64,000 bases of DNA from Ramazzottius varieornatus (Eukaryota > Animalia > Tardigrada), in assembly GCA_001949185.1 (NCBI GenBank), contig BDGG01000001.1, positions 2,931,324-2,995,323 of the forward strand. Direction: 5' to 3'. Positions 2,838 through 37,900 of the stretch are shown piece by piece. Position numbers and translations under genes: made by a program. The notes beneath the pieces are model-generated. The model saw only the letters and a program-made list of their open reading frames with translations, did not search any database and was not told the origin of the DNA. The stretch's first letter is position 1, and every line of letters starts with the position of its first letter.

Positions 2838-5800
2838 ATGTCTGGAGAAGGTAATCTGATCAACTTGGTACTAACCATCTGTATGCATTCACACATGACC
2901 AATCTCTTTTCAGAGCTGGACCTGGATTTCAAATATCGCAAAGGAGACCCTCAAAGATCGGCAGAAAGAACCTTCTTGACGCCCGAAATATTGGAATTGT
3001 ATGGAGAGTCCGAGGTACCTCACCCGAAAAATTTCCGTCATGAGCCGCCGGGACGAGTTTTAACTGCGGAAGTGCTGGAACTATACGGAGAGGAAGTCGA
3101 CGCAATGGCACAGCCAAAGGCCCTGGTATGGGAAAATGTCCGGGATGCCCTCAATGGTATCAGGTGAGCGACAGCTATCTGGCTCAGGAGGATATATATA
3201 TATATATATATGGCGGCCTATCCAATGGTGCGGTTTTATGCCATAGACCTCTCCTCCGAAGGAGACTGTACGGAGCGAACAAGTCATCCCAAGAGTTTCT
3301 CTCATCGTCGTTCCCTTTGTTTTCCCGTCTGAAGCACTACCAGGCTGCTTGGATTCCACGTGACATATTGGCTGGTTTTATCGTCGGAATGATTCAATTC
3401 ACTCAAGGTACCTCGTACCGACGTTCCTCAAATTACAGTGCGAAGATTGTCGGTCTTTACATTATTCGCTCCTAGTTTTCGGAAACTCTCAAACCGCCAC
3501 CGTAAGGCCGACCAGTGGTCTCAACATCTTGCTGTTTCCGGGCCTGGTCTATGCATTCATGGCCAGCTCCCTGTACAACTCTTTGGGCGGTACTACTATC
3601 GCCGTCGCTACTCTGCGGGTATCATTGGGATACATTGAAGACCAACACTATCCAGGCGGTATGAATGGAAAACACAAGATGACTGACACGGAACTGATGG
3701 ACCTGCATACTTACATCGCTCCTGGTATCGCTTTCATCGCCGGCTTCGTGCAGGTACGTCAACTGCGCTTTCCAATGCCACTGTCCACCGTAAAGATTCA
3801 CCGAAGCTTTATCCGTTCGATCTTCCAGATTGGTTTGGGGTTCTTGAAGCTGGGCTTCCTGTATGGGATACTGTCACCTAATGTGATGGAGCCGTTCTTT
3901 CTGGCCTGCTTCCTCCAGTCTATCTGCGGCAAAGTTCCATCTGCTTTCGGACTGGAACCACCTGTGATTTTCGGGTTCGCCCAACAGTTTCAGGTACGAC
4001 TCTCTGCTCCTACTCTCTGCTCGTACTCGTACCGTCACTCTGCTGCGGTACGTATCTAGACGTCTAATCATATGTGTCGGCTTCACTTTAGTATCTCTAC
4101 TTTTTCCTCACAAACCTCGGGTCTATCAACGGGTGGGAAACACTGCTGTCCTTCGCGATGGCCTCCACTGTTCTGGTCTTCAGGGAATTCTGGCAGCCAC
4201 GCATATTCACTCGTTATCGGCTGGTGGCACCGATCGAATTCATACTGTTCGTAATCTTCAGCATAATCAGCTACTTAGCCGACTTCCGAGGAAAAGGCAT
4301 CCGGGTAGTCGGAAGTTATTCGTATGGGTAATTTTGTTATCGAATGTGGACGATAATTCGTATGTACGACGGCGGCGCACCAAAGCCTTTTGCATCGTTC
4401 TCTGTAGGGTTCCTCGACCGACGGTTCCTGACCTGTCGTACGGCTGGCCGATGGCGTTCGCCGGAATTGTTTTGGCCATTGTGACTTACAGCGCTACACT
4501 AGACTCCGCCAAAGTTCTGGCCAGGAAACATGATCCTCCAGTTTCGGCGAACCAAGAGCTTCTGGCGCTCGGTGTCGCTCACGTCTTTGGCTCGTTCTTC
4601 GCGTGCTTCCCCGTTGGAGCGCCGATAGGGCGAGGAAGAGTCAATCAGTCCATGGGAAGTCGTTCACAGCTGTCGACGTGAGCATACACGTGTTTTTCAT
4701 GAGACCGAAGGAGAATGATTTTGCAAGTTCAACTCAACCATGGACAGTCATACCAAACTTTGGTTACACTGTCCGATTCATTTAAGTGCCCTGTCGTTAG
4801 TAGGGATAATGGTTGCAGGCTGGTAGCTTGTGTTTTCGCCGGTATTGTGATCGGATACGCTGGACCAGCTATCCAGTATCTTCCTCTGGTACGTCTTATT
4901 GCGCGTTCGGACTAAATGGTTATCCTGTTCTAAGTTGTACCGGCAAATTGCAGTGTGTCGTCTCGACCAACATGATTTTGTTCCTCAGCATGTCCCTCAC
5001 TGCCTTCAAAGAACTTCCCAGATTGTGGGCCTTTAACAATATCGACGCTGTAGGTACGTGATCTTAATCTGTTAGCCCAAAGCCTTACTCCGGTTTGTTT
5101 TAGGCAGTGTGGATCCTTACATTCGCTTGTGGGATGTTACTGAACGTTCAAGTTGGGTTGTTCGTGGGAGTCAGTGTATCGTTGCTAAGCCTTATCGTTC
5201 GAAGTCAACGGTAATCTATTTCTCAAAGCATTACGGCCTGAACCAACAGTGCGCGACCCTTTTTCTTCTTTGCTATACAGGCCTAAGGTTCGGGTGTTGG
5301 GATTACTGAAAGACACTCAGTGGGGGATCGCCGCGTTGAAGCACCATTCAGAAATAGTCCGTACTGCAGCTCTTTTGAAATTTGCTCACGGAACAGATTT
5401 TGCACCTATCAACCGCCATTGCTTGTTGTACAGGCAAGTGAATTACCGGGAGTGCGTATCCTGCAAATCCAGAGTCCTGTAAACTATGCCAATGCAGACT
5501 ACCTGGTTAAAGAAGTCATGAATCTCGCCCTCGAGCCATACGAAGCCAATGCTGTCCCGCCACCACTCCCCGCTACAGCGTTTGCAGACAGACGTCCGGA
5601 TGACGGCGATCCTTTTCGGCATACCACAGTCTCGGACGTTTTCAACTCCAAAGTAACACATCTCATCGTATCACGGAAACTCGCATGTTATGTTTCATGA
5701 TGTTCTAGAACCCTGCAGTTCGAGCACTTGCATACTCCCGCTCGCTTACTAGCTTGGGCTTGCGACCGCGCAAATCCATATATGATTTTCCTCAACGCGT

Positions 5801-6980
5801 TAATGGACCAAGGACGACCTTCAGCAACCCCGCAGTCTCTACTCAACCAACCCTCGGTGGCAAAAACACCGCAACCCGTGTGGTGTTAGATATGGGTAGC
5901 GTCGGGTATATAGACACTGTCGGCATTCGCGCGCTGGAGCAAATTGCGTCGGATGCAAAGATTCGCCGTGTAGAAATTATCCTTGCACAATGCACAGGTG
6001 ACTTGTTCATATCTTCAATGCTCCTCTGTACCTTAACACTCATAATACCGATACAACTCGGGTACAACTCGGTTTCGCAGCGCACGGTTACCTGACCGCA
6101 AATCTCTTCCTGTGCAGCTCTGGCGGTTCAGTATTTTTTGTTTGCCTGTAGTGGCAAGTTCTCTATGACATGTAGCTGGTGACCGCTGGCTAAACACTAC
6201 GTACGGGATTAGAAATATTAGACAAAACATCGCAAGTTGCTCGTGGTGTTTCGAAATATGGCGCAGCCCATGACGTCACGAACGATACTACCACTGGTGG
6301 CGCCGCCAAGGTGGCAAGAAGTAAATTCAATTTTTTCAGATTTCTATTTTACGCATTGCCATTTTACGCATTGCCATTTTACGCATTGCCCTGTCCCAGA
6401 AAGACTGAGCGAAGAACGATGATTGTTTGTGGTTCATGTAACGTTCATGTTTGTGCAGCGCGCAGATTAACGAAGCAGAGTGTTGTTTGTTTAGATTGCA
6501 GCAAAAAGAAATCGAAATAAGTGTAGCGAAAAGTAAAATGAAATACATTGGCGTACCCCGGTCATGTGGCGGAACATTACGTTGGTTTTGCGCAGTAACA
6601 TTCGCAACTTCACGGGGGATCACCGTGATTGGTCTATACACGCCTCTATCGTGCTACCAGCCAGTTAAAAGGCTGCGAAACTTAGTTGTACCCCCGGTAT
6701 TCTGCCAGCATGAAATTGCCCGGTATTACAAGTGTTAAGGACGAACATTTCTACAGGACCGCTGCTGAGACAACTCCAGGAGCTCGCGACCCATAAGATT
6801 ATACCCCAACGCAACATATTCCCCAGCGTGGTGGACGCTGTTGTTGAGTCTATTGGGCGTAACCGCATCAAGTCGGTTCCCGCCGATGGTCTGGTCGAAG
6901 AGTACGAGGATGATCGATTTTGGGATCTGCCTGTTGTCCCGGTTGAAGGTCTACCTGTAGTCGACTACCATCAAGACTAA
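2838..6980 (+). CDS. SLC26/SulP-family anion transporter with C-terminal STAS domain (multi-exon)
   Basis: Motifs DILAGFIVGMIQ, QIGLGFLKLGFL, NQELLALG, GSRSQLS, RPKVRVLG, PGVRILQIQSPVNYANADY, VVLDMGSVGYIDTVGIRALEQI and NIFPSVVDAV; ATG at 2838, last exon 6757-6980. Confidence 0.92.
3192..3211. repeat. (AT)10 microsatellite in an SLC26 intron
   Basis: Directly visible run atatatatatatatatatat. Confidence 0.95.
6037..6734 (+). mobile_element. Non-autonomous piggyBac-like element (698 bp) in the last SLC26 intron
   Basis: TTAA at 6033-6036 and 6735-6738; TIR CACTCATAATACCG vs CACTTGTAATACCG (12/14); subterminal IR GGGTACAACT..GTTTCGCAGC at both ends; internal remnant CPRKTERRTMIVCGSCNVHVC...CLDC resembles the piggyBac transposase C-terminal Cys-rich domain; removal leaves a typical 57-nt intron. 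Confidence 0.85.
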
Positions 6981-8639: not shown

Positions 8640-10569
8640 ATGCCAGGTAGGACGGGAAGATAGCCAGATATGATAGAGACTTTCGCTTTTACGGGAATCC
8701 ATTGTCATTCCCTTGGTGCTCATTTCGATGTCAGCTTCTTATAATTTATGATGTAAAATGTTCGTATTTGGTTTCAGACATGCTGCATATCTTCTGGGAT
8801 TACACGTCGTGTCCTCTCCGCAAGTCTGCGGGAGCGCCAGCAGAAATCAGGAATTCTTTCCTGAACATAGCGAAGGATCTCGACATGCCTACAACCAACT
8901 ACAGCGCTCTTGGCATACACATCTTCACACGCAACCCAAAGGTGGATTCGATCACCAATCCCACCAAGGAAATGCTAAATGAATGGAAGATGGCAGTAAG
9001 CAGACTTAACAGAAAGTATACAAATCATATCAATATTCTTTAATGGCGTACGAATAAATATCATGGGAAAAGCGACGCCACCTATCGGCCTCACCGACCT
9101 ATGTTGAAACCGGTTTACACTGTCACGTTGTCACAGGGTATTTTCTCGTGAAGCACGTGACAAATTCCTTGATTTCTAACCGGAGGGATGTATCAACCAT
9201 ACAGTGGGTTCGCTTGTTATGTCATTAAGGTAGAAGAGTAGACGGTAAGATCGTTAGTTATTACGCATGTCACGAACTTGACCTTGCTGTTTTTAGGGGG
9301 CGAAGATCCGCTACGTGAACGACGGAGTCAGTGGATCTCTGGAATACGAAGCTCGAAAATGGTTCTACTCACTGGTGAAGAAGGCGGCTTCGTCGAACTT
9401 TCTGGTCGTCACCGGTAGAAACGGATCGTTTTCTCTGTTAATTTGAAGTTGAGAGCCTAGCACAGAATTCTTGGTTACAGGAAACCGACAGTTGTGGTCG
9501 ACGGTATTCTCGTACGATGGACGAGTTGGGTTTGGCTGGGCTGTCGAGGTTCTAACAGATGGGAAGGTGACGGGTCGCGCCACATTGCACCGCTGCGCTC
9601 CAGCGGTCATTGCAGAGGCCGAATATGAATGGGATACTGCGTTAGGAGCTGTGATTCCGTATGACGGAGAGGGTAGTGGAGAGAGTGGAGAGGACGAGTT
9701 CGACGCTATTCGCACTGCGGCGAACTTGGGTTGGCCACAGTTGTTGCACTTCTCGGTTCTTAGAGTGTACTTCACCATTATATTTTTCTCTATTGGGGAC
9801 GTAGGGTCAGGAAACAGTAGCTTTAGTGATGATGAAGACGATGAGGATAGCCCAGCCGACGTCGTTCCTTTCAGCGCCAGCTTGGACTTCGCAGGTAGCC
9901 ATAAAATTAATTTCTCCGTCCGTTGATGAAACGTAATCAAGGGCAATTGCTGCTAATCGCCTAGACACACTGCAAGTTTTTTGGGACTATGAAAACTGCA
10001 ACTTGAGAAGCACTGTCGGAATGGCGAACATTCTCCAGTCCTTCGATCTGGCTGCCGCCGACAAGGGTCTATCCCAGATGTGCATCAGTATGTTCTGCAA
10101 GCACTACGAATTTGGAGTTGTGCCGACTCAGGCCACTGTCCAGGATCTGCGTTCACTGGTACGGACTGTGCCTTGAAAGAGCATGAGGTTAGGAACCTAT
10201 TGGTATATTCTAAAGTACCTTGCTTTTCCAGGGCGTCAACGTCTCCATGGCCAACGACAACGTCCCAGAAATCTGTGACGATATGATCGTCCAGGAAGTC
10301 GCAGCGCGAGCGAAGTTCGCTATGGTTGGACCAACGCTTTTGGTCACAGGTACAACCATAAGACACTTTCGTAGCTGTATAAACTCACTTACTGTAATGT
10401 GGGTTCAGGAGACCGGAAGTTGATCAAGCGAGTCCAGGCAGCGGTGCTGAAGGCTTCACCCGGTAAGCAAGATTACCTCGGTGCCTTCGAGTTCTGCGGC
10501 AACCCTAACACCAACCCTTCAAACCGGTACTGCTGGGACCCTTCCTCCGGAATTCGTCTGCAAAATTGA
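8640..10569 (+). CDS. Tandem NYN-NYN (PIN-like, MARF1/LabA type) domain protein, 384 aa, 8 coding exons
   Basis: Exons 8640-8646, 8778-8995, 9297-9414, 9481-9729, 9805-9894, 9965-10158, 10232-10349 and 10409-10569 join in frame with GT-AG introns (1155 nt). Domain 1 is HIFWDYTSC...LVVTGNRQ and domain 2 is QVFWDYENC...ICDDMI...LLVTGDRK, with an acidic linker between them. Confidence 0.8.
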
Positions 10570-11026: not shown

Positions 11027-14000
11027 TCAACTGTTTGAAAGAGGAACAGCAGGAGCGCTGGCAGCCAGGACCAGCTGGTAGTTTTCCTGGATGGTCCGGC
11101 TCGGGTCCTTGGCCAGCTTTTCCATGGCTCTTCCGAACAGCGAGTGCTTGCGCGCACTTTGGGGAATATAAAGAAGGCACCGAGTAGCGGCAAGGCGTAC
11201 GGCTACCACGTTACTATCAAACAAAGGCCAGAAGCGGTCTCCAAAGTGCAGAGTGAAAGAATCAAAACTGAGAGCCGCTTTCGATAATAAATCTTCACAA
11301 AACTGAGCAAAGACTTGGTGGGACCGAAATTCGTCGTTACGTAAAAACAACTCTAGCTTCTTCGAAAAGATTTCTCGACTGGCCACGTCGCGTTGCTGTT
11401 CTATCCGCATGAAGATGGACGATAAAGCGATACATGCACTCTTCCTCACTTCCGCCGTCCTGAAAACAAACGAAAACGTTTGTACCAGTACACGACTGAA
11501 AGATCCTCGGTACAGCCACCTTTCTAGAACCTGCATACACCAAACTGGATGCCAACCACGGCTGAAGTATTTACGCAACTGTCTGAAAGACAACGCAGGG
11601 GGTTTAGACACCCTGCATACCATCGCAGCGTTGAAATGGTGCAGTCCGTTATATGCAGGTTCGCGAACGACTGCTAGATTGTATATAGACTTCAGAGGAA
11701 GGTAAATTTGACTTACCTGTCTCTAGCGAAGAACCATGCACCATCCATCAAGTTTCTCACTACGAGCTTCGGTGGAAACAAAAGGGCTAAATGGGCTATC
11801 TGCTCAGCACAAGCTTGCCGATACCGCCAGTTTCTTTCCTCATCAGGTGAAAAGAACTCACACAGCCTGAGCAAATGCAGTGGTCTAATTTCGGACGGAA
11901 GTCTCATGATGAAAGCCGAATAGTTCTCAATCATGTTCAGCCGAACACTGTCCGTGTCCTTCAGAAACTCGTTAACTAACGGAACGAGGTCGACAAGTGT
12001 GTAGTAGTGACCGATGATTTCGGCAATCCTGTAAAGATACGTATTTAAGTAGTTATTCTACAATTATAAAAATTTCTGAGATTCTTACCTTGGTAAAGAT
12101 GCAGCGATAAGTTCCCTCGCCGGCATGACATTCGATGAAGCGAGTGCTCTGTGGCAGTCATGAAGTTCTGGCCAGAACTGTCGACCAACCGTGAACGCCA
12201 CTGCCGGGAAGTCCATGGCCACTTGGACAACCACTTCCTTCTCGCTATCTTTACTCAACGACAGAAACTCTTGCAGGAACCTCACGTTGGGAAGAATGTC
12301 TTCCAAACGACTGGATATTTCCCCGGCCTCTTTCAGCTGCATCATCACAGCTATGTCTCTTCGCATATGCTTATCCACTATGAAGGGATCGATCTCGTAC
12401 GAAGAAGCGTACGGCGCCTAAAATCAACAAAAATATTCGAATCATTTTATTTGGTCACATTCTAATTTATTTTCTTCCATTTGATCATTCATTTTTTACT
12501 GAAAGATTCTGAATAAGTTGGAGGAAGTTGAGAAGGACTTACGTGACCAGCAGAGTTGCATTGAACAAAAGTTGATGTGGACAAGTCGTGTGACATAGAC
12601 GAGGTCGAGCTGACCGAGTGCGAGTCATCTGACAGGAAGTTCTCTTGTGACGGCGAGGCCTTCTTCTGGGGTGTACTGGTCGCTTGTGGTGTTAGAGTCT
12701 TGCCATCCGGTTCGTCAGGTGAGTCAGGAGCGAGAATGGTATCGCGGAAAAGCTCCGACCACTTCTCGCTCGGATCGTCGAGAGAGATGCCGCGCGACCT
12801 CAAATCTTCGGAACTGCTTTCGATGACTTGTTCTTCCAGATCCGGATCGACTATCTCGGCATCCGGATCCGCCGCCAGCACCTGTGACAAAATGCTTTTT
12901 TACTCATGGATGCTTCTTCAGAAGATTTTCGTCTGTACCAATTCCAAAACCTGCATTCTTACCTGCTTCTCGAGTTCTTCCGTCAGAATGTCCACCTGTG
13001 CATCGCTCTGCGCCACAGTTGTATCTTTCGAGCCGGAAGTTAGATTTTCGTTAGCCTCTGAGGCGCTCTTGTTCTCTGCTGGTTGATTCTTTACTTTGCT
13101 CTCTTCCTCTTCGTCCGCTTTCTCCGCACCGGCGGATTCGTCTACGGACTTTTCTCGCGCTGTCAACGTTTCATCTTTACCGTCTTCCACCTGACCATGA
13201 TCGGTTCTACTTTCATCTTCTGCCACGTTCTCCTTGTTATCAAGGTGTCCCTCACTCTCGGCCAAGGTCTGCAAATACAAACCCATCCGTTACTTTTTCC
13301 AAAGCACAGCTATTCAATTTGACTAACCTCTTCAACGATGACGGGTATCTTCTCAGTACCGACAACCGCCACCTGGGCAATGGGACTCTGCCAGTACTGA
13401 TAGCAGTAAAAGTCCGGCTTCTCTTCCGCCCTCTTCTTCCCTTCCGGTTCACTCAGAGCATGATTTAACGATGTTACGATGCCCAGTCGATTGTAATAGT
13501 TGCGTCGGGGGTGTCCAGCTACGTGTGACAAGGCCGGGCTAGACGCAACTCCACTGGGCGTACGATTATGCACGAGACCACGTCCGCGCTCTCGTCCATC
13601 TCCCGTCCCACCTTCCGACCTTCGATCGAAGTCTTCCGAATCGCTGAGGCGGTAGGCTGGGAAGTGTGGAGGAGGTACGAACTCGACGGTACCGTTGGTG
13701 GTGATGTGCAGGCGGGTCTTGGAAGGATCAGCAGAGCATGCAATAACTCGGCCAAGTCCGCGCGTTGCCCATCGACGCACCTGAAAAGATGAAAAGTTTG
13801 GTCAACTCTAGTAGTTACAGTACGCATAAGCATCAAAGATGAGCTACAGTACAGGTTCCGGAATCAAAAGACTGCTTTGCTAAAATTAAACGAGATACTA
13901 ACAGCCCGAAGCGTCTGACACTCATCCACCTGCATACCAAAACACAGCAACATGATGCAACATGATTGTGCATCGCATGTGTATGCAAGATGGGCTCATT

Positions 14001-16201
14001 CTGTTTGATTACGTTCAACATCTCAACGAAATTTCGCACAAAAAAGGGGACAAAATTTTGGAAGAAAAAATGATCACAAAGAGTATCCGAAAAGCGAAGA
14101 AGGGTGGCCATAGGGAAAGAAAGTTAACAACAATAATGGGATTTAATATGGATGGTTGATTTAGTTAGCGAACCTGTTTGGCTTGGTCGTTGATCAGGTT
14201 GGCATAAGCTGGGTACAAACTGCGGTTTGTGAACGTGGGCCATCTTTTATGACATATCTCGATGACTTGAGGAAAAACACCGGCTACTGTTTCGCGCACA
14301 TGCCACGCAAAGTCGTGCGACAAAGACACAACCTTCTCCTGTATCTGCCGGCAAGGTTCATCATCTTCGCCGAATTCTTCCGCCTGCGTCACGACGAAAT
14401 ATCGCACCACTAAAGCACAGAACCACCAGCATTAATTAATAACAATAATAACAGGGTACACGGCAATCAAACTGAAAATCAACATGAATATTTTCCGATG
14501 TTGCGCACGATCTTCAGTGTTCCTGACTGAGAGCGTGCGCCACCTGGAAGAACAATTTTGTCGAGTTTATAACCCAGTTTGCCATCTTACCAAAAGGAAA
14601 GTTTTGAGCGCAAACTTGTCGAATTTGAGCAACGTCGTGGTTGCACAGCTTGTTAAACTCTGGAACAAACAACCGCTTGACAGGTTCCGGTCCCACTTTG
14701 TCCAACAGCTTACAGAACAGATTCAGAGCGTCGATCATGAGGTCTGCAGTAGCTTCTGCGTAAAATATCTGAATGAGCAGAGGAACCACCGAAGCTGTTA
14801 TGGTCTCCCTTGTCATCAGATCCGGAGCGAACTCTACCAGCTGACCAATGGCGACTTGTGCCAACCGCCTGACATTGTAGTTGTCATCACGGATACAATC
14901 ACCGAGGAACGACATCATTCGGAGCTTCTTGAAAGACGGCTTGTACCCTCTGACGATGTTCGGAATCTGTTCGAGAAAAGCTATCCGAACTTGAGAGTCG
15001 TTGTCTTGGATGAGACGTTCGAAGAGCTTTGATGAAGCGGTGAGGAAAGCTTCGGGATCTTCTGCGTCTTTGACGAAGTTAACGTACTGCACAGCCACAC
15101 CATTTCTACGATGGAGAAAATTTCAAAACGAAATGAACCAATAAAAAGTAATTGGGAGCTCGTCAAGATTTATTTCCCAAAAGGCGCACGTCTTCAGTAT
15201 CGCTGGCCAGTTGTTTGCGCCACTCGAAAAAGTAATCTTGTCGAGTTGCTGTTCAACACAAAGAAACAAATTTATTTCTCGAAAAAGATCAGTGCCATTA
15301 AAACCTAAGAATATTTTGACATATTCTGCAGAGTATTGAGGAGAGCAGCGCAGTACCTGCAAACCATGTTAGGGTTGTCGACGTATAGCTGTAATCTTTC
15401 GATAGGAGTCATCAGGCGTTCGTCCTTTGGTTGGGGCGCAGCTGGCGGAGGTTCAACAGGATCAACAGTCTGCTCGGGCTTGATCGGTGATTGTGCCTTT
15501 CCCGACTCGCTCTGACACGTTGTTACTTTGAACCTACCTAGCGAAGGCGAAGTAGATCCGTCAGTTTTCGTGGGAGAGGAAGACAGCTGAGGAGGTGACT
15601 GGAGGTTGAGCGTGAGGGCTCCATTCGTCAAACTACGCAACCTATTTGAGCCTATAATAGAAACGTCACACTTCTTAACCTTTCGTTATGAAGAACCAGA
15701 CCCTCACTCAGACCAACCCTGATCACCTTGAGGAGTAACCGGAAGGACTTCAGTGACAGCAACAGGCTTGGCCATCGTCGAAGGAACTTCGAAGCTGATA
15801 ACCTCGTCTTCATCCTCGTCGTCTTCATCCATCACGTCATCCAGGAGTCCCGTTTCGTATTCCAGTTCATGGCTATCCACAACCGAGACTATCTTGAAGG
15901 ACGGATGGTCAGGCTTAGCTTCACTCTCCTGCTGCCGCTCTTCTTCCGCTCCTTCTTCGCAATCTCTTTCTTTCTCGTCTTCGTGGTGATCAACCACGCC
16001 GTTCACCAGTTCAGGCTTTTCTTGAGCAGGCGGTGTTTCTTCCACATTGGAAACTTCGGTGGCGCTTGAAAGGTTTTCTTTCTCGCGTTTTTTCATTTCA
16101 GCTTGTTGCGCAGGCTCGTTCACTGGGTTGTCGTGATGCTTCGCTTCTCTTCTGCTCTTGGAGGAGAACTCTCCTTGAGGTATTACATCCACATCGCCCA
16201 T
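11027..16201 (-). CDS. PPP4R1: Serine/threonine-protein phosphatase 4 regulatory subunit 1 (HEAT repeats), multi-exon
   Basis: MTPIERLQLY, DNDSQVRIAFLEQIPNI, DFAWHVRETVA, YQYWQSPI, FPAVAFTVGRQFWPEL and RNWRYRQACAEQI match conserved PP4R1 blocks; long acidic N-terminal and central low-complexity inserts; ATG 16201, stop 11027. Confidence 0.88.
15157..15247 (-). repeat. Intronic ~100-nt hairpin family, copy a (PPP4R1 intron)
   Basis: CTCGTCAAGATT...AGGCGCACG-loop-TGCGCCACT...AATCTTGTCGAG; the consensus loop reads on the minus (sense) strand. Confidence 0.75.
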
Positions 16202-26023: not shown

Positions 26024-27747
26024 CTTGAGGATTCAGCGACAATCACAACTTGCAAAACTCTGCCTTGGGATAAAGCCCCGAACAAGACCAGAATCGCAGA
26101 CGTAGTCACAAAGAAAAAGTAGAGCACGCTGCCTGCAGTGCAAAATCACACATCCGTACAGCAAGCGAAGATTTCTCTCGAGAACGTTGCGCTGGTTATT
26201 AGCGCCAGTTTAGTTAACTCCACTGCACAGCGTGACGATGACGAAGTTCAGTCAAATTTGGGTATCGTACAGATCTTCAGTCCACACTTACCATGATAGC
26301 TCGCTTGTACACGCCGAGTCAAACGATGGCTGCAGCTGCAAGTCTGTTGCTGTCCTCCACTAGTCCGTGATGAGCCGAGAGTCCAAGAGACGCGTCAATG
26401 GAGAGCGACTTGTTTCTGTCAGCAACCGTCTATTAGTGTGAAAATCTACCACAACTCGTACAGCACTGCATGAGTCGTCAGCTTCGGCCAATCTCGAAGT
26501 AAACAGTCCTTGGGAAGGAACCTTCTGATAATGAAGTCACGGATGTCCAGTTCCCCCTTAGAGATGGAAGATAAGAACTGAAGAAGAATTTAGAACTTCA
26601 GCAACCAGAGAAAATACGCTCGGGTGAAAAATTCTTCATGCTGCTTTTGTCCTTGGGGCTGCTGAGGGTAAACCGCCGCTCTCCAGAGTCCAGACGGCAG
26701 ACTGTCCAGTGTTCAACGAAACACGAATGCTGGTTTGCTGCCTTCAGCAAAATCTCGTGAGCTAAATCCAGTGTTGTTTCAATATGACTTTTTTGATTTT
26801 AATTGCACTTACGATTGACTGGAATACCACGGGCCGCAGCAATTTCAATAATGTGGGGATTCAGTCCAGCTGAATTAGTAATTACAATGAATAGGAATTC
26901 AGCTCGGTACAGCAACTGAAAATATTTAAGTTGTGGTAGTTCATTTTCGTGATTTTGATATTCATACGACTGCTACTTTCACGCACCGTAAGCCTCTCGT
27001 TTCATGCGAGTAGAATGCCCGTCAGATGTTTAGCACAAAGCATGGCACAACCAAGGCACTGTATACGGATGCGCTGACGTCAACTCGATTGTTATGCTTC
27101 TGAAACAGAGCCCTGGCGCAGTAGCTGAAACCAGTGCTGCTTCTGCACTGCACCCGGTTTCCAGAACCTGCAACTGCACTACGTCTGCAATAGTGGGCTG
27201 TTTTCCAAACTACAACTGGACTGCACTGCATTAAAAAATTAAGAGTTTCTGCCCACCAACGGAAATGCATGTAAACGTCGTTGTTTTACGAAGAATCAAG
27301 CGGAAAACGGTAGAATCGGGCCAGAAAATGCAAACCAAGACCGATTTTACTACTGTTTTCTAGCCCACAACAGAGTACTGCGATGAACGGTGCTCACTTT
27401 TTCAAAACTGCAACTGCACTGCAACTGCAATTAAGCACATTAAGTTGCCAGTCCACGTTCACATTCCCACTGTAGCGAAGGCTTGCTCCGCCCCTTTTGT
27501 GACGGGTAACTACAATTTACTTCCCGGAGCTCCCCTTATTTTCCGCAAATAAGGGGAGTCGGAATTCCGGTTAGATAGCATTGGGAAGCATGATGGTTGC
27601 CCAACTATTCAAGGTTGTGGCTCAAAAATCGATTTTTGATTTCGCCATAAATTCTTTTTATGGTGATCATTTGACATTCCTGCTCTTTGTTGTAGTATTA
27701 TTTCTTGTACAGCGTCACAGGTCTTCCTTAGGGGAAGGAAGGTGAAC

Positions 27748-28762
27748 ATGGAGGGCGAGGAAGAGTTTTCTGTCGATGCTGCATTGGCAGTGAGATCCCC
27801 AGCATCGGTGACAAGCGGAGGAGCTGCGGCCGAGTTAGCACTACAATGGGACGAGGACAGCCAAGTTCGCCTTCTTCGTCAGTATCGCACCACAGCGGAA
27901 GTTTTCGCAGGTACCGATACAGAGATGTGGAATGATATATTCCAGAAGCTCAGATCAGCTGGGATGAAGCTGAAGACTGCCCGTTCTGCCAAAGACAAGT
28001 TGACAGAAATGATCAAGGCGTTCAAGGCATCGAATCGCCTTGACGAGTGGAAATCGGGAGATCCCGGGACCTTCACAGAAAAAGAGCAGCTGTTGGTTGA
28101 GCTAGTCAACTATTCAAAGAGCATGAAGGGAAGCGTCGAAAGAAGCAGTCCGTCAAGAGGGTGCTGGAAGATGAGAAGCAGTCGCGCAAAGACAAGAAGA
28201 TGATGGACGCGACCACCTTCTGCAAGCGCAAACGTCGCTTCAATGGAGCTCGTGAGCTGACTCCTGATCCTCTGGACGGTAAGTTTTTCGAGTTTCAGGT
28301 AAGATCGCGCTGCCATTACTGAGATGGGTATTTAGGTGAAATGGCGAGAGATTGCAACAGGTATCAGATACCAGGTGCGGCACTTGACCCGGGTCAAGTG
28401 GCGTATCCCTTACGCAGGTCAAGTGGTGCACATGAAATGTGTTGCTTTTAGGTGGGAAGTCGGACGAAGAAGTCACCAATACACCAAAGCGTGAACGTAC
28501 TAGCTATAATCACATGATCAGTACTTTCTTGGACGGTTCTTCAGATGTGAAGATGAAGGAGCTGCAGCTCAAGCAGGAACAGCTGGAAGTGGAGCGTGGC
28601 CGTGAGTCTCGTCTGGCCGAAGAATACAAAATGAAGTACGATCTGGAACTAAATGAAGTACGAATGGGAGCTGACAATCAGAAGGACGAATCTAACCGTA
28701 AGCGAGATGAACTGATGGCTGCTGTCATGATGGAAGCATTGAAAGGTCTGAAGAAAGATTGA
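27748..28762 (+). pseudogene. Harbinger Myb/SANT-like DNA-binding protein, apparently frameshifted near 28125-28130
   Basis: W-spaced trihelix pattern (LQWDEDSQVRLL...MWNDIFQKL...KTARSAKDKL). Frame 1 stops at 28203, but a -1 shift continues (KRRKKQSVKR...PDPLD) to a GTAAG donor at 28279, and exon 28452-28762 is in phase with it. Confidence 0.7.
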
Positions 28763-31970: not shown

Positions 31971-34900
31971 ATGGCCGGGCCAGGCAGACTCGGCCTGGGG
32001 TTCGTAACAAGCGATCGTCTTCAGGAAGGTGCCGGAAGTGAAATGAACAGAAGTAACAGCGGGAGCAACGACTTGGCAGCTGGTAAATGTTATGATAGTG
32101 TCTGCGACTGTTCAGTGGATGCAAGTGCAGCATTTTCGGGTGATGAGCTGGACCGCGATTGATAGTGATATACTACAGGTGCGAAGCGTAGCCCATTCAT
32201 CGGGTTGTTTTGGGACATCGAGAACTGCGCGATTCCGCCTTCTAAGAGCGTCAAAGATGTCGTCACATTCCTTCGCCAGAAATTCGTTCTACAACCTGGA
32301 CGCAGGGAAAGAGAATTCACCGTGGTCTGTGATACTAGGAAGGAAAGAACAGCTGATGAGCTAGGAGAACAGCAGGTCGGTTATAACTTGCGTTCTTTTT
32401 GTTGATGTTGATCACAGTATAGGTCAGTTTTAGCCACTTGTTGAATACATTAGGTTCACAGTCTGTCGTTTCTCGGATTGTCGCATGCTGGTCGTTAACT
32501 TTGTAGGTGAACGTGGTGCATATCCAAGCAAGATCCAAGAACGCGGCAGACGACCGACTACGCACCGTCATGCGCAAATTCTACGACACGCATAATCCGG
32601 GAGATGTTTGCCTGTTGATTTCGGGTAAGCTTCTGTCTACCGGCAGTGCGAGGTAATTTTACTGTGTTGTTGTCTGTCTATAGGAGATATCAACTTCCAG
32701 GTCGGTGGACTATGCTACTCTGAGCATCTCAAGTTCAGAATATCTTGAGGCAATGGCTCCCCATACTACAGTACCATTCTCCAACTCCACACCATCAAAG
32801 TTTTCCGCGTACTATCTTCTAATTATCGCTATTTACTCCACCAGTTGCTCCGTCTACTATCGGAGCTATGAAATTTTGGTCGGCCGATCTGTTTCGAAAT
32901 CATCGACGCGCAAGGCTTGCAACGGCAAAAAAAGACCTTTACAAAGGAGGGCATGCTATGATGATGGGACTGGCTTTACGTGCCTCCTTTGTAACTACTT
33001 GTAAATGTGGACTATTGCGCCGTGCCGCCCCAACTCGTGGTTGAACTGTGCGCAGAATATGCAGCAATTCCCGCCGGTGACCTGGTCCTGGACCGCAGGG
33101 GACCCGTAGTGGGTGGCAGTAAGACTGAGCTAGTTCAGAGTTCACATTGGAGTTAAATTTTTAGAAAGACACGCGAAACTAACATCTACGTAGTACTCGT
33201 AGCAAAAGGTAGTGTCGAAGGTAGTACGCGGAGCCTTCTGGTAGTGCGTAGCATTTAGTGTAGTGTACGGTAGTGCGCGGAGTATTTAGGTGGTGCGGGT
33301 AGTATGCGGAGCCATTACCATATCTTGATCTCGCCTGAGTTCTAATATGATGTGCAGGAAACCTTGATGACGGGAAAGCTGGACAAACAGCTCCGTATTA
33401 TCGTGCTGCATCCAGGAAGAGCCAACGACAACTTCCTTCAGTTCACCGACGAGGTCTACTCGTTCGAAGATCTGATGGATCAAGTACCTGATGCAGAGAA
33501 GAAAGTCTATGCTGTAAGTTCCTCAGTCTTTATTCCTGTACAATTCATATTTTCAAACGAGAGTCTTTGTGGGTTGCAGAACCATGATTTCAACAACACG
33601 CTGTACGTCGCGAACCTTCCTCCGACATGGGACATGGACAAGCTACAAAGGACTCTTCGGAGCAAGGTCGAGATGCTTGGGGGAAGGGTAACTGTGGATA
33701 AGGCCAAACGCCTAGCCATGGTTCGTTTCGCCAACCCCAGCCAGACACGAAGGTAAAGAAAGGTAGACTTAGGCTAGGACGTTGAACAAATCTTCCCGAC
33801 TGATGTCCACTGTTTGTGTGCCTGACAAACAAACTCGACCAGATTGTTTTCCCCCAGTAGCGCATGTTAGAAGCCGATAATACTGAGAAAACGCGCCACG
33901 TGGAAGAACGATCTTGCCGAGCTCTCATCTAATCTTCTGTAATGGTCCTAATAGTTCATTCTTCTTGGTTTCTTTTCGACAGAGGTTACGCTAAGATGCG
34001 GGATGAGGATATTGGTGGCTACATCACCCAGTGTTCTTTTCACTCAAAGTCCGAGTTGGAAAAAGAGCGACAGCAGAATGAAGGCATTAGATCAGCGGCC
34101 CCCCGTCATCACCATAACAGTGGTAACAGTTGGCAGAACGGCTACAGTCCACCCAGTGGCCCTAGTCAACTCGCTGACTCCATGTCAGAGCTGCATGTGA
34201 CCAACGGGGTCCCAACTCAAGCCCAACGAGGGATCTTCGCCAGTCACAAACGAGACGACAGTCTCAGTTACTCAGCGGCGTTGGCTGGCCCCAGTGGAGC
34301 GAACAACGTAGTATCGCATGTAAGCCAAGGACTGGAACCAAAGGTAGCGCAAGCGCCGCAGCCCGCAGAGCCATTCGCGCTGAAGAAGACTAAGACTCCC
34401 GGGTTCTTTGAGCGATACTGGGATCGAGAAACGCTGAAGAATGTCTCCGTACAGAATACAGGAAACCGATCGGGAGATGAGGATACACCAAGAGTGAGTC
34501 TTCTCAAACGAGAGCCTCGGTCAGCGCAAGGGTTCAACTTGGGAGTTTCAAAGTCGTCAGCTGGCAACGCAGGAGGTAATTACATTCGTCTCATAACTTG
34601 TGAGCTCGGCGAACAAACTTACTTGTTCAGCCAGATCGTTCCTCCAAGTGGCGCATGTTGTCAATCAATGACACTGAAAGCATCCGCCACTTGGGAAAAT
34701 AATCTGGTCGAGATTGTTTTGCCAAGCTCCACTTTGTGCAGAGTTTTTCAAACAGTCTGCTGTCAAGTTCTAATCATGTAGTTTCAACCAAGTTTCAATC
34801 GTGTTGCCTCGTAGATGGTTCTTCTAGCGGCGGGATGGAAAGTGAGACAAAGTCCCGACAGAACTCCGGAGGCAGTGAAGGAGACCATCAAGATTTGGTT

Positions 34901-37900
34901 GACATGTACATTGTCAACTTGGAAAGCAGCATTGAAGAGCCAGAACAGTACCTGGAATTGTTGAGCATGGTAGATGATATCACCGATTCCGACGTAAGTC
35001 TTTGTGGTATACGAAAGCGATGATTATGTCCTGCTTTGGAAGCTCATCAGACAAACTCAGCAAGGTTGTTTTCCCCACTGGCGCACGTTGTAGAGCTAAT
35101 GCTTGAAAGCGTGCGACTCTTTGAGATTCCATCTGCCAAGTTTGTCTGGTCATCTGGTTGTTGTCCAGAATTTTTTTATCTACTTATTGATAGAATGAGA
35201 CATTGACTATTCGGAAAGCACCCAACAACGTGACGTACGCTCACTTGGCCGTGACTGCAGAGGCCGCCGTGAAGCTGAAGGATCAGCTTGACGACATGAA
35301 CTTCCATGGTCGTGTCTTGATGGTCACTGATGAGTGCCCGGAAGTTGAATCGAGCAGCCCGTCAGGCCCAGAGCCGGAATATGTCCAGAACCATGACTTT
35401 GTCTCCCAAATACGCAAAGAAAAGGACAGTAGTGGTGGATTGAACCCTCTCAAGTAGGTCACGATAGTCTTTGATGATTAGTAGCCATTTTACTTCTGAC
35501 AGCAGATGAAATAGAAAATTTGGTTTGATTTTAGACAAGCTGTCATTCGAGTATTCAAGATGGCGAAGAAGGATGAACTGGCTTTGATAACTCTGCTGCG
35601 CTCGTTCGAGAAAGAGTAAGGCTCTCCATTCCATGTCCGTATACCGTATAGAGTTCGATTACGAATATTCTTATTAGGTATGATCAATCGCTGGATTTGA
35701 AAACATTGCGCGCTATGTCTGACATCGTTCGTGAGAGAGTACGGGATGCAAAGAAATTTATGCAGCTGAACCCGGAAGCTAAACGTTGGGATGCCGAGAG
35801 GGAAAGAAAGGTACGTGAAAGCTTCCTATACTGTGCCTCGATTCTTTCATCCAGCTTTAATGCTGACAACGAAATTTTTTGTCCTGTGAAATTCAGAACG
35901 GTGGGGAGGTGCTACCGTTGTCCTACTGCATCAAGCACTGTCCCGGAGGTTTCATGAACGGTGTTTGGGCTAAGAAGCTGTATGAGCCGTTGAAGCTGTA
36001 CCACGTCTCCAGTGGGTTCTTTGCGGAATCCGTTACGCAATTACTGAAGAAACATCAGAACTGTGTACCGCTGAACTCGTAAGTTTCGCACTACCCTTTC
36101 TTATGCGATGTAATGCTGACAAGGGGACTACGCCAAGCGGCGTATCCTGATGATCAAACCGACTAAACAGAAAGATAGAGGAGAGTTTGGCGCACAGTTT
36201 GAGCTGTCAAACTACAGTAGTCCAAATGCAAATCCAGGAAGATTTTGCGGGATCCGGCACTACCGGCTCCAAGTTGCTGCAATGACGCAAAGCTCTTCGA
36301 CTGGTAATCTTGACTGGCTGCGAACTGTCCACCCGATCAGCTGGTTTGTCATGTTATGACCCGATAGCATGCCATCCTGCGCGCACAACGTGCCGTGGTA
36401 TACCGTTCTGTGACTGGATGTCGAAACAGCTGATCAGGTGAACAATTCGCAGCCAATCAAAACTACCAATCAAAGCTTTGCGTCATTGTAGTAACTTGGA
36501 GCCGGTAGTCCCGGATCCCACAGAATCTTTCAAGATTTAATATTTCGATTAGTTTGACAGCTCAAACTGTGCGCAAGACTCTCCTCTATCTTTCTGTTGG
36601 GTCGGTCTGGTCGTCAGGATGCGCTGCTTGGCGTAATCCCTTGTGAGTCTTTGTCTGTTTAAAATCCTGACAAACTCGACAAGATCGAGTTTCAAAGTGG
36701 CGCACGCTTATAGCCAATAACACCGCGGACGTGCGCCGAGGTTGTCGAGTTGGTCTGTCGAGCTCCCACTTGGTAGTTTAGCAGAGCGAAACTCATTTTA
36801 GGTTCTTGGTGTGCTATGAGGAGTTTTACAAAGACGAGTTGAAGGAAGTGGCACAGAATGACAATACGAACCGGAAGTCGGGTGTTTTTCTCGAGCACCT
36901 TCTGTTGGCTGTACCGGATGTTAGGATCGTCAGGCGACCAAATGGACCACGTCAACTTGTGCTGGCCGGACCCAACGACAAGATTAGTAAGGATGTTCGA
37001 CCTTGAAAATGATATGGTATTATAGAGAGCACGAACGAGCCTACGTTGGCTGTTTTTGCAGAGCCAGGTGAGAATGCGGCCAGAAGTGGTATCGGTGCCG
37101 GGGTGTCTTCCGGTGTAGAAGTTCGGAAAGTGTTGGAGTCACAGCCACGTGCTGCGATGCATTATTCGAACTTGGCCGACGCGCTTCGTCAATGTGGAAT
37201 ACTTTGCGAGACGCGCGGAGACGATTCCGAAACCGTACTGGCTCTTGTCCAGCAGTCATCGGCTGACTTCGAGGTAAATTTATATTTTCCGGAAGTTTTA
37301 TTTGCATGTTCTTCGACTGAAATATGTTATCCATTTCCATTATCACAATTTATTGGACCAAATGTTTTTTTGATCGTATAGGTTATTGGATTCGGTGCTG
37401 AACGAGTTGTGACGTTGAGTCATGCGGCGCAAGTACGACGCTTCTTGGCTCTGGTTGACCAAATCAGGGTTCTGTGCGAAGATGAGAAGATTACCGAGGG
37501 CAACATCGACACGCTGTTCGAAATGGCAGGGCTGAAGAGCTCGGAGAAGCATACTTTCGATGTGGCGGACTTCGGGGTGTGTGAAGTTGAAGACCTACTG
37601 GCGCACATCAGCGACGCACCGCAGTCCGTGGCAGGAGCTGTAGGGAACGCTGGTGATCGTACTACATCAGCTCGCACTGACGGTGAGTATACTTTGTAAA
37701 TTTCTTTTACTCATTCTAGTATGGGGTGACACCAGCCCGTTCAAGCAAAGTTGTGACCACGGATTATTCAAAATTGTCGGATAATTCACGATGAGACTCT
37801 CGGGCCTAACTTTTAGGCTACGGGTGAAAGCCCTGTCAATAAGCTGCTAGAATCAACCGAAAACGAAGGTACCCTTGGCTGCCGAGAAGGGACCGTATGG

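What the first reader, a model, noticed from the sequence alone, without database searches (positions are those of the whole stretch)
8640..10569. Stand-alone double-NYN ribonuclease gene (pseudo-nuclease plus intact nuclease) derived from the neighbouring MARF1
Seen: an 8-exon, 384-aa ORF, not visible as a whole in the ORF track, consisting of two NYN domains joined by a very acidic linker (GEDEFD...DDEDDED). Each domain has the exon layout of the NYN domain of the MARF1 gene 22 kb away: a phase-1 intron before FWD, a phase-0 intron before (G)VNV/GAKI, and a phase-1 intron inside (S/T)|GD. The middle exon is exactly 118 nt in all three cases (9297-9414, 10232-10349, 32507-32624). Domain 2 keeps the motif residues (FWDYENC, ICDD, TGD), whereas domain 1 has lost most of them (FWDYTSC, no DD, TGN). 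Established: MARF1 NYN is a PIN-fold RNase acting on mRNAs and retrotransposon RNA, and it is targeted by its RRM/LOTUS domains. Inference: local duplication released the NYN module from its targeting domains and fused it to a catalytically dead copy, giving a pseudo-dimeric RNase or a MARF1 regulator, possibly in RNA defence or stress-related decay. I do not recognise this architecture as described.
Basis: partly seen in the sequence, partly recalled or inferred. Interest (0 to 1): 0.82.

Follow-up and report, generated by a model that had tools for sequence, protein, structure and literature searches.

The report
Tardigrade gene with two NYN-like halves
This is a real, already deposited but unstudied gene of the tardigrade Ramazzottius varieornatus: a very diverged MARF1-type RNase (NYN) module was duplicated head-to-tail, the second copy keeps most catalytic residues, the first has lost them but is still conserved, and it is not a recent copy of the MARF1 gene next door.

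Summary
Eight GT-AG exons at 8640-10569 (+) encode 384 aa, identical to the deposited protein RvY_01039-2 (GAU88321.1, auto-named "NYN domain-containing protein"). A second deposited isoform retains the in-frame 75-nt intron 4.

- **Two halves:** they are homologous (28% identity over 121 aa, E 7e-12) and share all three intron positions, so this is an old internal tandem duplication.
- **NYN assignment:** probable, not proven. Pfam finds nothing. Support comes from the FWDxENC / DD / (S/T)GD motifs and spacing, weak pairwise and profile matches, and a low-confidence model.
- **Catalytic residues:** half 2 keeps D235, N238, D308/D309 and D333 but lacks the beta2 aspartate. Half 1 keeps only D10.
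- **Conservation:** half 1 is 68% conserved in fragments from a second, unnamed organism.
- **Origin:** "copied from the neighbouring MARF1" is not supported. There is no DNA similarity. MARF1 has an extra intron. Three other stand-alone NYN-like genes share the intron layout, and they are at least as similar to half 2 as MARF1 is.

Verdict: an uncharacterised tandem variant of a known domain family, of modest interest. Earlier scan notes cover other stand-alone NYN genes in this genome, not this one.

The parts
8640..8646 (+). Exon 1: start codon plus 4 nt (M-P and the first base of D3). A phase-1 intron follows.
   Evidence: It matches the N-terminus of deposited P0001.
8778..8995 (+). Exon 2: first part of half 1 (beta1 FWDYTSC through alpha2). 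It ends in phase 0.
   Evidence: The ENA fragment P0005 is 68% identical, with FWDYTSCPLRKSA invariant.
9297..9414 (+). Exon 3: the 118-nt middle exon of half 1 (GAKI...LEYE...VVT-G). It has E91/Y92 where the catalytic DD would be.
9481..9729 (+). Exon 4: N116 (in place of the SGD Asp), the C-terminal part of half 1 with the conserved HRCAPAVIA.AEYEWD block, and the start of the acidic linker.
   Evidence: The ENA fragment P0011 is 68% identical and also has N at this position.
9730..9804 (+). Intron 4 (GT..AG, 75 nt, in frame, no stop). It is retained in the deposited 409-aa isoform and adds 25 mostly hydrophobic residues to the linker.
9805..9894 (+). Exon 5: acidic linker (SDDEDDED...). It ends in phase 1.
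9965..10158 (+). Exon 6: first part of half 2 (FWDYENC with D235 and N238; the beta2 region FCKHYE has no Asp).
10232..10349 (+). Exon 7: the 118-nt middle exon of half 2 (GVNV...ICDD with D308/D309...LLVT-G).
10409..10569 (+). Exon 8: D333 (the SGD-type Asp), the C-terminal part of half 2 with the YCWD...G motif, and the stop codon.
32179..32700 (+). Comparison only, not part of the gene: the NYN exons of the neighbouring MARF1 (32179-32375, 32507-32624, mini-exon 32684-32700). The domain continues at 33358.
   Evidence: Exon A matches Pfam PF01936 at E 0.0025. The exon joins are confirmed by the tardigrade transcript-derived protein P0013, which matches NYN at 1.8e-11. A LOTUS domain lies at 38526-38738.

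Best explanation
RvY_01039 is a genuine, transcribed tardigrade gene for a 42-kDa acidic protein with no signal peptide. It consists of two very diverged MARF1-type (NYN.1, PIN-like) modules joined by an acidic disordered linker.

It arose by an old internal tandem duplication of a four-exon NYN unit. It belongs to a small set of degenerate, domain-only NYN-like genes in this genome rather than being a recent offshoot of the adjacent MARF1.

Most likely (inferred, not shown), the C-terminal module is the only candidate metal-dependent endoribonuclease site. It has D235, N238, D308/D309, T331 and D333, with E276 possibly replacing the missing beta2 Asp. The N-terminal module is a conserved non-catalytic partner that binds RNA or a protein, or positions the active module. 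In that role it would replace the RRM and LOTUS targeting domains of MARF1.
For: **Gene model.** It is identical to the deposited proteins. Two isoforms in an annotation built from Cufflinks RNA-seq models merged with ab initio models imply transcript support (PMC5034306).

**The halves are homologous.** E 7e-12, with all three intron positions and phases matched.

**NYN relationship of half 2.**
- The only PDB sequence hits are the MARF1 NYN domains 6fdl and 5yaa, aligned from FWD to DD, though at E = 2.
- BLASTP against the tardigrade MARF1 protein P0013 aligns aa 232-333 with 47-144, bringing FWD, DD and GD into register, E 1e-3. P0013 itself matches Pfam NYN at 1.8e-11.
- hhalign of the stand-alone family profile against P0001 gives 83% probability, E 9e-6 over 108 columns. 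The same profile against MARF1 gives 89%, E 2e-6.
- Shuffle z-scores are 6-11.6.
- Language-model nearest clusters are PF01936 for both halves, at 0.87-0.88.
- The AF2 model with a shallow alignment gives a beta-alpha-beta-alpha-beta-alpha-beta-alpha-beta order for aa 231-347. Foldseek's top hits are the MARF1 NYN domains 5yaa and 6fdl, E 5e-4 to 3e-3.

**Catalytic residues.** These are defined in PMC6217404 (D178, D215, D246, D272, N181, S270) and PMC6294520 (D358, D426, D427, D452). Half 2 keeps all but the beta2 Asp, although it is only about 23% identical to the tardigrade MARF1 NYN domain.

**Half 1 is conserved.** It is 68% identical in fragments P0005 and P0011 from another organism, including its substituted motifs FWDYTSC and the N of TGN.
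Against: - Pfam PF01936 does not match the whole protein or any exon, even at E <= 10.
- Exon-level profile searches of the PDB found nothing.
- Both AF2 runs are low confidence (mean pLDDT 36 and 38; half 2 about 50-62). The second used an alignment containing NYN relatives, so the Foldseek result is partly circular.
- The beta2 Asp, whose D215A mutation abolishes mouse MARF1 activity in vitro, is missing. The aligned residue is K273, H274 or Y275 depending on the alignment.
- I saw no read-level RNA-seq data, no expression data and no biochemical data.
- Whether the orthologue also has half 2 is unknown.
Confidence: 0.55

Rival explanations
1. One reading: a local DNA duplication of the NYN exons of the MARF1 gene 22 kb away released the nuclease module from its RRM and LOTUS targeting domains and fused it to a dead copy.
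For: - Both genes lie on the same strand of the same scaffold, 22 kb apart.
- They share a phase-0 intron and a phase-1 intron at aligned positions.
- The 118-nt middle exon is identical in length in MARF1 and in both halves, whereas the stand-alone paralogues have 145 and 151 nt.
Against: - There is no nucleotide similarity between the loci.
- Half 2 against the window's MARF1 first exon aligns only over the motif.
- At domain level, SW is 55 (z 6.0) to MARF1 against 53-75 (z 6.2-11.6) to the stand-alone genes on other scaffolds.
- The stand-alone genes share the same three intron phases, so the layout is a family trait.
- MARF1 has a fourth intron after GDINFQ that this gene lacks.
- The first intron is offset by 5 codons.
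- An orthologue in a second organism shows the gene is old.
Confidence: 0.15
2. Both modules are catalytically dead. The protein would be a pure pseudo-nuclease that binds RNA, or competes with or regulates MARF1 or decapping factors.
For: - Both halves lack the beta2 Asp, which is indispensable in mouse MARF1. Both carry K/R-type residues there (FCKH, FTRN), so the loss predates the internal duplication.
- The related stand-alone family has also lost a catalytic Asp, with AGS or AGG in place of SGD.
- The NYN.1 cluster is known to include predicted inactive members (PMC5499597).
Against: - Half 2 keeps D235, N238, D308, D309, T331 and D333 despite about 23% identity to MARF1 NYN, while half 1 lost them. 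This asymmetry suggests selection on the acidic pocket.
- E276 lies 1-3 residues from the beta2 position and could substitute.
- The human MARF1 acidic patch as defined in PMC6294520 (D358, D426, D427, D452) is fully matched.
Confidence: 0.3
3. It is not a NYN protein at all. On this view the FWDxENC, DD and GD matches are coincidental in a lineage-restricted protein of another fold, or the locus is a decaying or mis-annotated gene.
For: - There is no Pfam hit.
- The PDB sequence hits are at E = 2.
- The profile match at exon level covers only 14 columns, and the middle exons show no signal.
- The AF2 models are of low confidence.
Against: - Three motifs occur in the right order and spacing: D235 to D308 is 73 residues and D309 to D333 is 24, against 68 and 26 in mouse MARF1.
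- The intron positions are shared.
- The hhalign match covers 108 columns at E 9e-6 to a family that itself matches MARF1 NYN.
- The only two PDB sequence hits, out of 177,635 sequences, are the predicted family.
- The frame is intact over eight exons, and an orthologue is 68% conserved.
Confidence: 0.08

Closest known systems
NYN domain of MARF1 / limkain-b1 (Pfam PF01936; NYN.1 cluster of Matelska et al. 2017; structures 5YAA, 6FDL)
   Same: It shares the FWDxENC start, the DD at the start of helix 3 and the (S/T)GD at the end of strand 4 in the same order and spacing, a domain length of about 155 aa, and two exactly shared intron positions. Half 2 keeps the acidic patch D358/D426/D427/D452 as defined for human MARF1.
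   Different: - It is only about 23% identical and is not detected by the Pfam model.
- It has no RRM or LOTUS domains.
- The module occurs twice in tandem.
- The beta2 Asp (mouse D215) is absent in both copies.
- Half 1 also lacks the Asn, the DD and the SGD Asp.
Tardigrade stand-alone NYN-like proteins RvY_14279, RvY_14872 and BV898_01040 (Hypsibius exemplaris), plus a third locus at C1:2660177-2660541
   Same: These are small domain-only proteins of the same genome and phylum with the same three intron phases. They are undetected by Pfam and have a degenerate catalytic set. Their similarity to half 2 (hhalign E 9e-6) is on a par with their similarity to MARF1.
   Different: - They have a single module behind a disordered N-terminus.
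- They keep the beta2 Asp/Glu and a DDD but have lost the SGD Asp, the opposite pattern to half 2.
- Their middle exon is 145-151 nt, not 118.
- Within the family they are 67-90% identical, but they are only about 20-27% identical to RvY_01039.
Plant stand-alone or expanded NYN.1 paralogues and DNE1 (NYN + OST-HTH)
   Same: They show that the MARF1-type NYN module exists outside the MARF1 architecture, with both predicted active and inactive members (PMC5499597; bioRxiv 10.1101/2021.10.01.462782, by title and abstract only).
   Different: They belong to a different kingdom. No tandem NYN-NYN arrangement is reported there, and DNE1 keeps OST-HTH targeting domains.
Inactive PIN-like partners such as SMG5 and Utp23
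   Same: They are precedents for PIN-fold modules that lost the acidic residues yet are retained for binding (PMC6294520 for SMG5; PMC5499597 for Utp23). This is analogous to half 1.
   Different: They are separate polypeptides of other PIN subfamilies, not an intramolecular tandem. The resemblance is functional analogy only and was not tested here.

Membership tests
NYN domain, MARF1 type (PF01936 / NYN.1) | A match to the Pfam PF01936 profile at or above the gathering score (24.2 bits) | tested here: not met
   There were no families at E <= 10 for P0001 or for any single exon. As controls, the window's MARF1 exon A scores 18.8 bits and tardigrade MARF1 P0013 scores 45.2 bits.
NYN domain, MARF1 type (PF01936 / NYN.1) | Significant sequence relationship to bona fide NYN domains | tested here: inconclusive
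   For half 2: BLASTP to P0013 gives E 1e-3 in a single comparison; hhalign to the stand-alone family gives E 9e-6 and 83% probability; PDB phmmer finds only the MARF1 NYN domains, but at E = 2. Half 1 is linked only through half 2 (E 7e-12).
NYN domain, MARF1 type (PF01936 / NYN.1) | Four conserved catalytic Asp (mouse D178, D215, D246, D272) plus N181 and S270 | tested here: not met
   Half 2 has D235, D308/D309, D333, N238 and T331 but no Asp at the end of beta2. Half 1 has only D10, plus E91 at the D246 position.
NYN domain, MARF1 type (PF01936 / NYN.1) | PIN-like alpha/beta/alpha fold with a parallel sheet | tested here: inconclusive
   AF2 gave pLDDT 36 with a single sequence and 38 with a 9-row alignment. 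Half 2 reached 50-62 with the expected strand-helix order. Foldseek's top hits were 5yaa and 6fdl at E 5e-4 to 3e-3, TM 0.44-0.54. The alignment contained NYN relatives, so this is partly circular.
MARF1 orthologue | NYN followed by RRM and multiple LOTUS/OST-HTH domains | tested here: not met
   No RRM or OST-HTH was found in P0001. The true MARF1 is the separate gene at about 31971-39300, with NYN and OST-HTH hits.
Tardigrade stand-alone NYN-like family (RvY_14279 type) | GRPARVFWDLENC start, DDDLYEQ, LLIAG and a VYEYS.TKGI tail; 67-90% identity among members | tested here: not met
   Only distant similarity was found (SW 53-75, against 598-684 within the family). A profile search of the window's own genome with the family's first exon, aligned together with MARF1's first exon, does not pick up RvY_01039.

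The most novel reading that the evidence does not exclude
A tardigrade-lineage RNase in which a dead NYN copy, rather than RRM or LOTUS domains, supplies substrate or partner recognition to a live NYN copy in the same chain. This would be an intramolecular pseudo-dimeric PIN-like nuclease acting in mRNA or retroelement RNA decay, an architecture not described for the NYN family.
Probability: 0.2. Interest if true: 0.6.

Novelty: new variant of a known kind. Interest (0 to 1): 0.35.

Why it matters
If half 2 is active, this would be a minimal MARF1-type endoribonuclease paired with a conserved pseudo-nuclease module in one chain. That would make it a compact system for asking how PIN/NYN nucleases acquire specificity without separate RNA-binding domains.

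It also shows that tardigrades carry several NYN-derived genes too diverged for Pfam: this gene plus at least three stand-alone ones, each missing a different catalytic Asp. That points to repeated conversion of a nuclease fold into something else.

As it stands, this is one uncharacterised, already deposited gene. It has no expression or phenotype data and no demonstrated link to stress tolerance.

Tried and rejected
**Searches that found nothing**
- Pfam on single exons and on the whole protein.
- PF01936 six-frame search of the window's own genome. This is uninformative, because even MARF1 was missed.
- phmmer of exon 6 against 1.84 billion representatives: only the gene itself. I later realised this cannot show relatives above 50% identity, since they share its representative.
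- Two word-indexed searches with P0001: only the gene itself. These were limited to proteins of 211-672 aa, so they missed the short orthologue fragments.
- Exon-pair profiles against the PDB.
- Paralogue search of the window's own genome with P0001: only the gene itself.
- Two scans of JGI metagenomes.
- Literature searches for tardigrade NYN, RvY_01039 and tandem NYN, and the supplements of two tardigrade papers.

- Single-sequence AF2 failed, with pLDDT 36.
- A first mixed alignment of P0001 with MARF1 exons was too scattered to use.

**Ideas rejected**
- Recent local duplication from MARF1 (see rivals).
- A phylogeny of the modules. With three roughly equidistant groups and no outgroup sequences to hand, it would not be informative.

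Full report
**Source and method.** The window is Ramazzottius varieornatus scaffold C1:2931324-2995323. The organism was first suggested by an earlier scan note and then confirmed by the names of the matching deposited proteins. It is a tardigrade contig, not human.

Once the database returned the deposited full-length protein, I made all whole-protein searches with its id (P0001). One local script concatenated exon coordinates only to test equality with the deposited proteins, and printed coordinates and True/False. For the paralogues and MARF1 I worked by exon until deposited or transcript-derived proteins (P0004, P0006, P0013) were available.

**Observation.** The eight exons are 8640-8646, 8778-8995, 9297-9414, 9481-9729, 9805-9894, 9965-10158, 10232-10349 and 10409-10569. 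All have GT-AG introns.

Their product is identical to GAU88321.1 (RvY_01039-2, 384 aa, UniRef "NYN domain-containing protein"). Retaining the in-frame 75-nt intron 4 gives GAU88322.1 (RvY_01039-1, 409 aa).

The R. varieornatus gene set was made by merging TopHat/Cufflinks RNA-seq models with GlimmerHMM predictions (PMC5034306). Two isoforms and a 7-nt first coding exon therefore point to transcript support. That is an inference, because I saw no reads.

**The two halves.** Residues 1-180 and 222-384 align at 28% identity over 121 residues, 47 bits, E 7e-12. The Smith-Waterman score is 104, z 17.9. All three intron positions fall at aligned residues with the same phases. There is no nucleotide similarity between the halves. 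This is an old internal tandem duplication of a four-exon unit.

**Is it NYN?** Direct profile evidence is negative. Pfam finds nothing in the protein or its exons, and exon-pair profiles find nothing in the PDB. The indirect evidence all points the same way:
- The only two PDB sequences reached by phmmer are the MARF1 NYN domains 6fdl and 5yaa, aligned from FWD to DD, but at E = 2.
- BLASTP of P0001 against P0013 aligns aa 232-333 with 47-144 and puts FWD, DD and GD in register, E 1e-3. P0013 is a transcript-derived N-terminal MARF1 fragment of a related tardigrade that Pfam does call NYN, at 1.8e-11.
- A profile of the tardigrade stand-alone NYN-like family matches P0001 227-340 at 83% probability, E 9e-6, over 108 columns. 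The same profile matches MARF1 at 89%, E 2e-6.
- Shuffle z-scores are 6-11.6.
- Language-model neighbours of both halves are PF01936 clusters, at 0.87-0.88, which is a lead only.
- AF2 failed with a single sequence (pLDDT 36). With a 9-row alignment the mean pLDDT was 38, but half 2 reached 50-62 with a beta-alpha-beta-alpha-beta-alpha-beta-alpha-beta order. Foldseek then ranked the MARF1 NYN domains 5yaa and 6fdl first (E 5e-4 to 3e-3), followed by FEN, Utp24 and VPA0982 PIN-like folds. Because the alignment contained NYN relatives, this shows consistency and is not independent proof.

I put the NYN.1 origin of both halves at about 0.85-0.9.

**Catalytic residues.** Mouse MARF1 needs D178 (end of beta1), D215 (end of beta2), D246 (start of alpha3) and D272 (end of beta4). 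N181 and S270 are also conserved (PMC6217404). The human paper defines the patch as D358, D426, D427 and D452 (PMC6294520).
- Half 2 has D235, N238, D308/D309, T331 and D333, so it matches the whole human-defined patch. It has no Asp at the beta2 end. The aligned residue is K273, H274 or Y275 depending on the alignment, and E276 follows.
- Half 1 keeps D10 only. It has TS in place of EN, E91-Y92 in place of DD, N116 in place of the beta4 Asp, and no beta2 acid.
- Both halves have a basic residue after beta2 (FCKH, FTRN), so that loss predates the duplication.

**Origin.** The neighbouring gene is a true MARF1. Its first NYN exon matches PF01936, it has a LOTUS domain at 38526-38738, and its exon joins are confirmed by P0013. 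It is not identifiable as the donor, for these reasons:
- There is no DNA similarity.
- The first exons align only over the motif.
- MARF1 has a fourth intron after GDINFQ (mini-exon 32684-32700) that this gene lacks.
- A motif scan of the genome found two more FWDLENC genes, on scaffolds C10 and C11. These are RvY_14279 and RvY_14872. An earlier scan note led to a third, on C1 about 270 kb upstream.
- The C10 and C11 genes have the same three intron phases. They keep the beta2 acid and a DDD but have AGS or AGG in place of SGD.
- Half 2 is at least as similar to them (SW 53-75) as to MARF1 (SW 55).

The equal 118-nt middle exon, against 145 and 151 nt in the stand-alone genes, is the one feature that favours a MARF1-like ancestor. 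The three groups look roughly equidistant. Without outgroup sequences a tree would not resolve them, so the origin remains open. A recent local duplication is rejected.

**Distribution.** My early "only itself" results were artefacts of 50% clustering and length filters. A profile search recovered two short ENA gene calls on a contig of 6,321 bp:
- P0005 is 68% identical to exon 2, with FWDYTSCPLRKSA invariant and the same exon end.
- P0011 is 68% identical to exon 4, with N at the TGN position and HRCAPAVIA.AEYEWDT conserved.

An orthologue therefore exists in a second, unnamed organism. MARF1 and stand-alone-family fragments are also found in ENA assemblies; one of these is almost identical to Hypsibius exemplaris, which suggests another eutardigrade. 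Half 1 is under constraint in spite of its dead active site. Whether the orthologue also has half 2 is unknown.

**Mechanism.**
- *Shown:* one gene, two homologous modules, an asymmetric catalytic complement and a conserved half 1.
- *Inferred:* half 2 is a metal-binding, possibly active endoribonuclease site. The retention of five pocket residues at about 23% identity, while half 1 lost them, argues for selection on the pocket. Half 1 acts as a non-catalytic binding or positioning module.
- *Main rival:* both halves are dead, because D215A abolishes mouse MARF1 activity.

MARF1 NYN is monomeric in solution, so an intramolecular pseudo-dimer is speculation.

**Comparison and verdict.** The module is a known kind (NYN.1). 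Stand-alone and predicted-inactive NYN.1 proteins are known (PMC5499597). The gene is already deposited and auto-named. I found no paper describing a tandem NYN-NYN protein and none on this gene. I classify it as a new variant of a known kind, with interest 0.35.

Noticed in passing
G000:C10:~583300-584600 (-) (L016) and G000:C11:~407200-408060 (-) (L017): Two stand-alone NYN-like genes, RvY_14279 (244 aa) and RvY_14872 (232 aa). They have GRPARVFWDLENC, a beta2 Asp/Glu and a DDD, but AGS or AGG in place of the SGD Asp. They are undetected by Pfam. There is a 244-aa orthologue in Hypsibius exemplaris (BV898_01040) and ~90% identical proteins in Logan assemblies. They are candidate pseudo-nucleases conserved across eutardigrades.
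   Followed up: partly
G000:C1:2660177-2660541 (+) (L018, L022-L024), about 270 kb upstream of the window: A third member of that stand-alone family, with GRPARVFWDLDSC (the EN of the ENC motif replaced by DS). Its first NYN exon is split into three small exons. I reached it through an earlier scan note.
   Followed up: partly
window:29272-30463 (-): Two adjacent ORFs of a PIF/Harbinger-type DDE transposase (DDE_Tnp_4, E 1e-6) lie about 1.5 kb upstream of the MARF1 start. ORFs at 27742-28762 (+), with no Pfam hit, may be its Myb-like partner.
   Followed up: partly
window:32684-32700 (+): MARF1 has a 17-nt mini-exon encoding (G)DINFQ, followed by a 657-nt intron. The join is confirmed by a transcript-derived protein from a related tardigrade (P0013).
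   Followed up: yes
window:9730-9804 (+): Intron 4 is 75 nt, in frame and free of stops. Its retention is a deposited isoform that inserts 25 mostly hydrophobic residues into the acidic linker. Whether this is regulated or is noise is unknown.
   Followed up: partly
window:~3500-6980 (+) and ~11027-16200 (-): The flanking genes read as an SLC26/STAS-type anion transporter upstream (my reading of the ORFs, not tested) and a HEAT-repeat protein downstream on the opposite strand (Pfam HEAT only at E 0.006).
   Followed up: no
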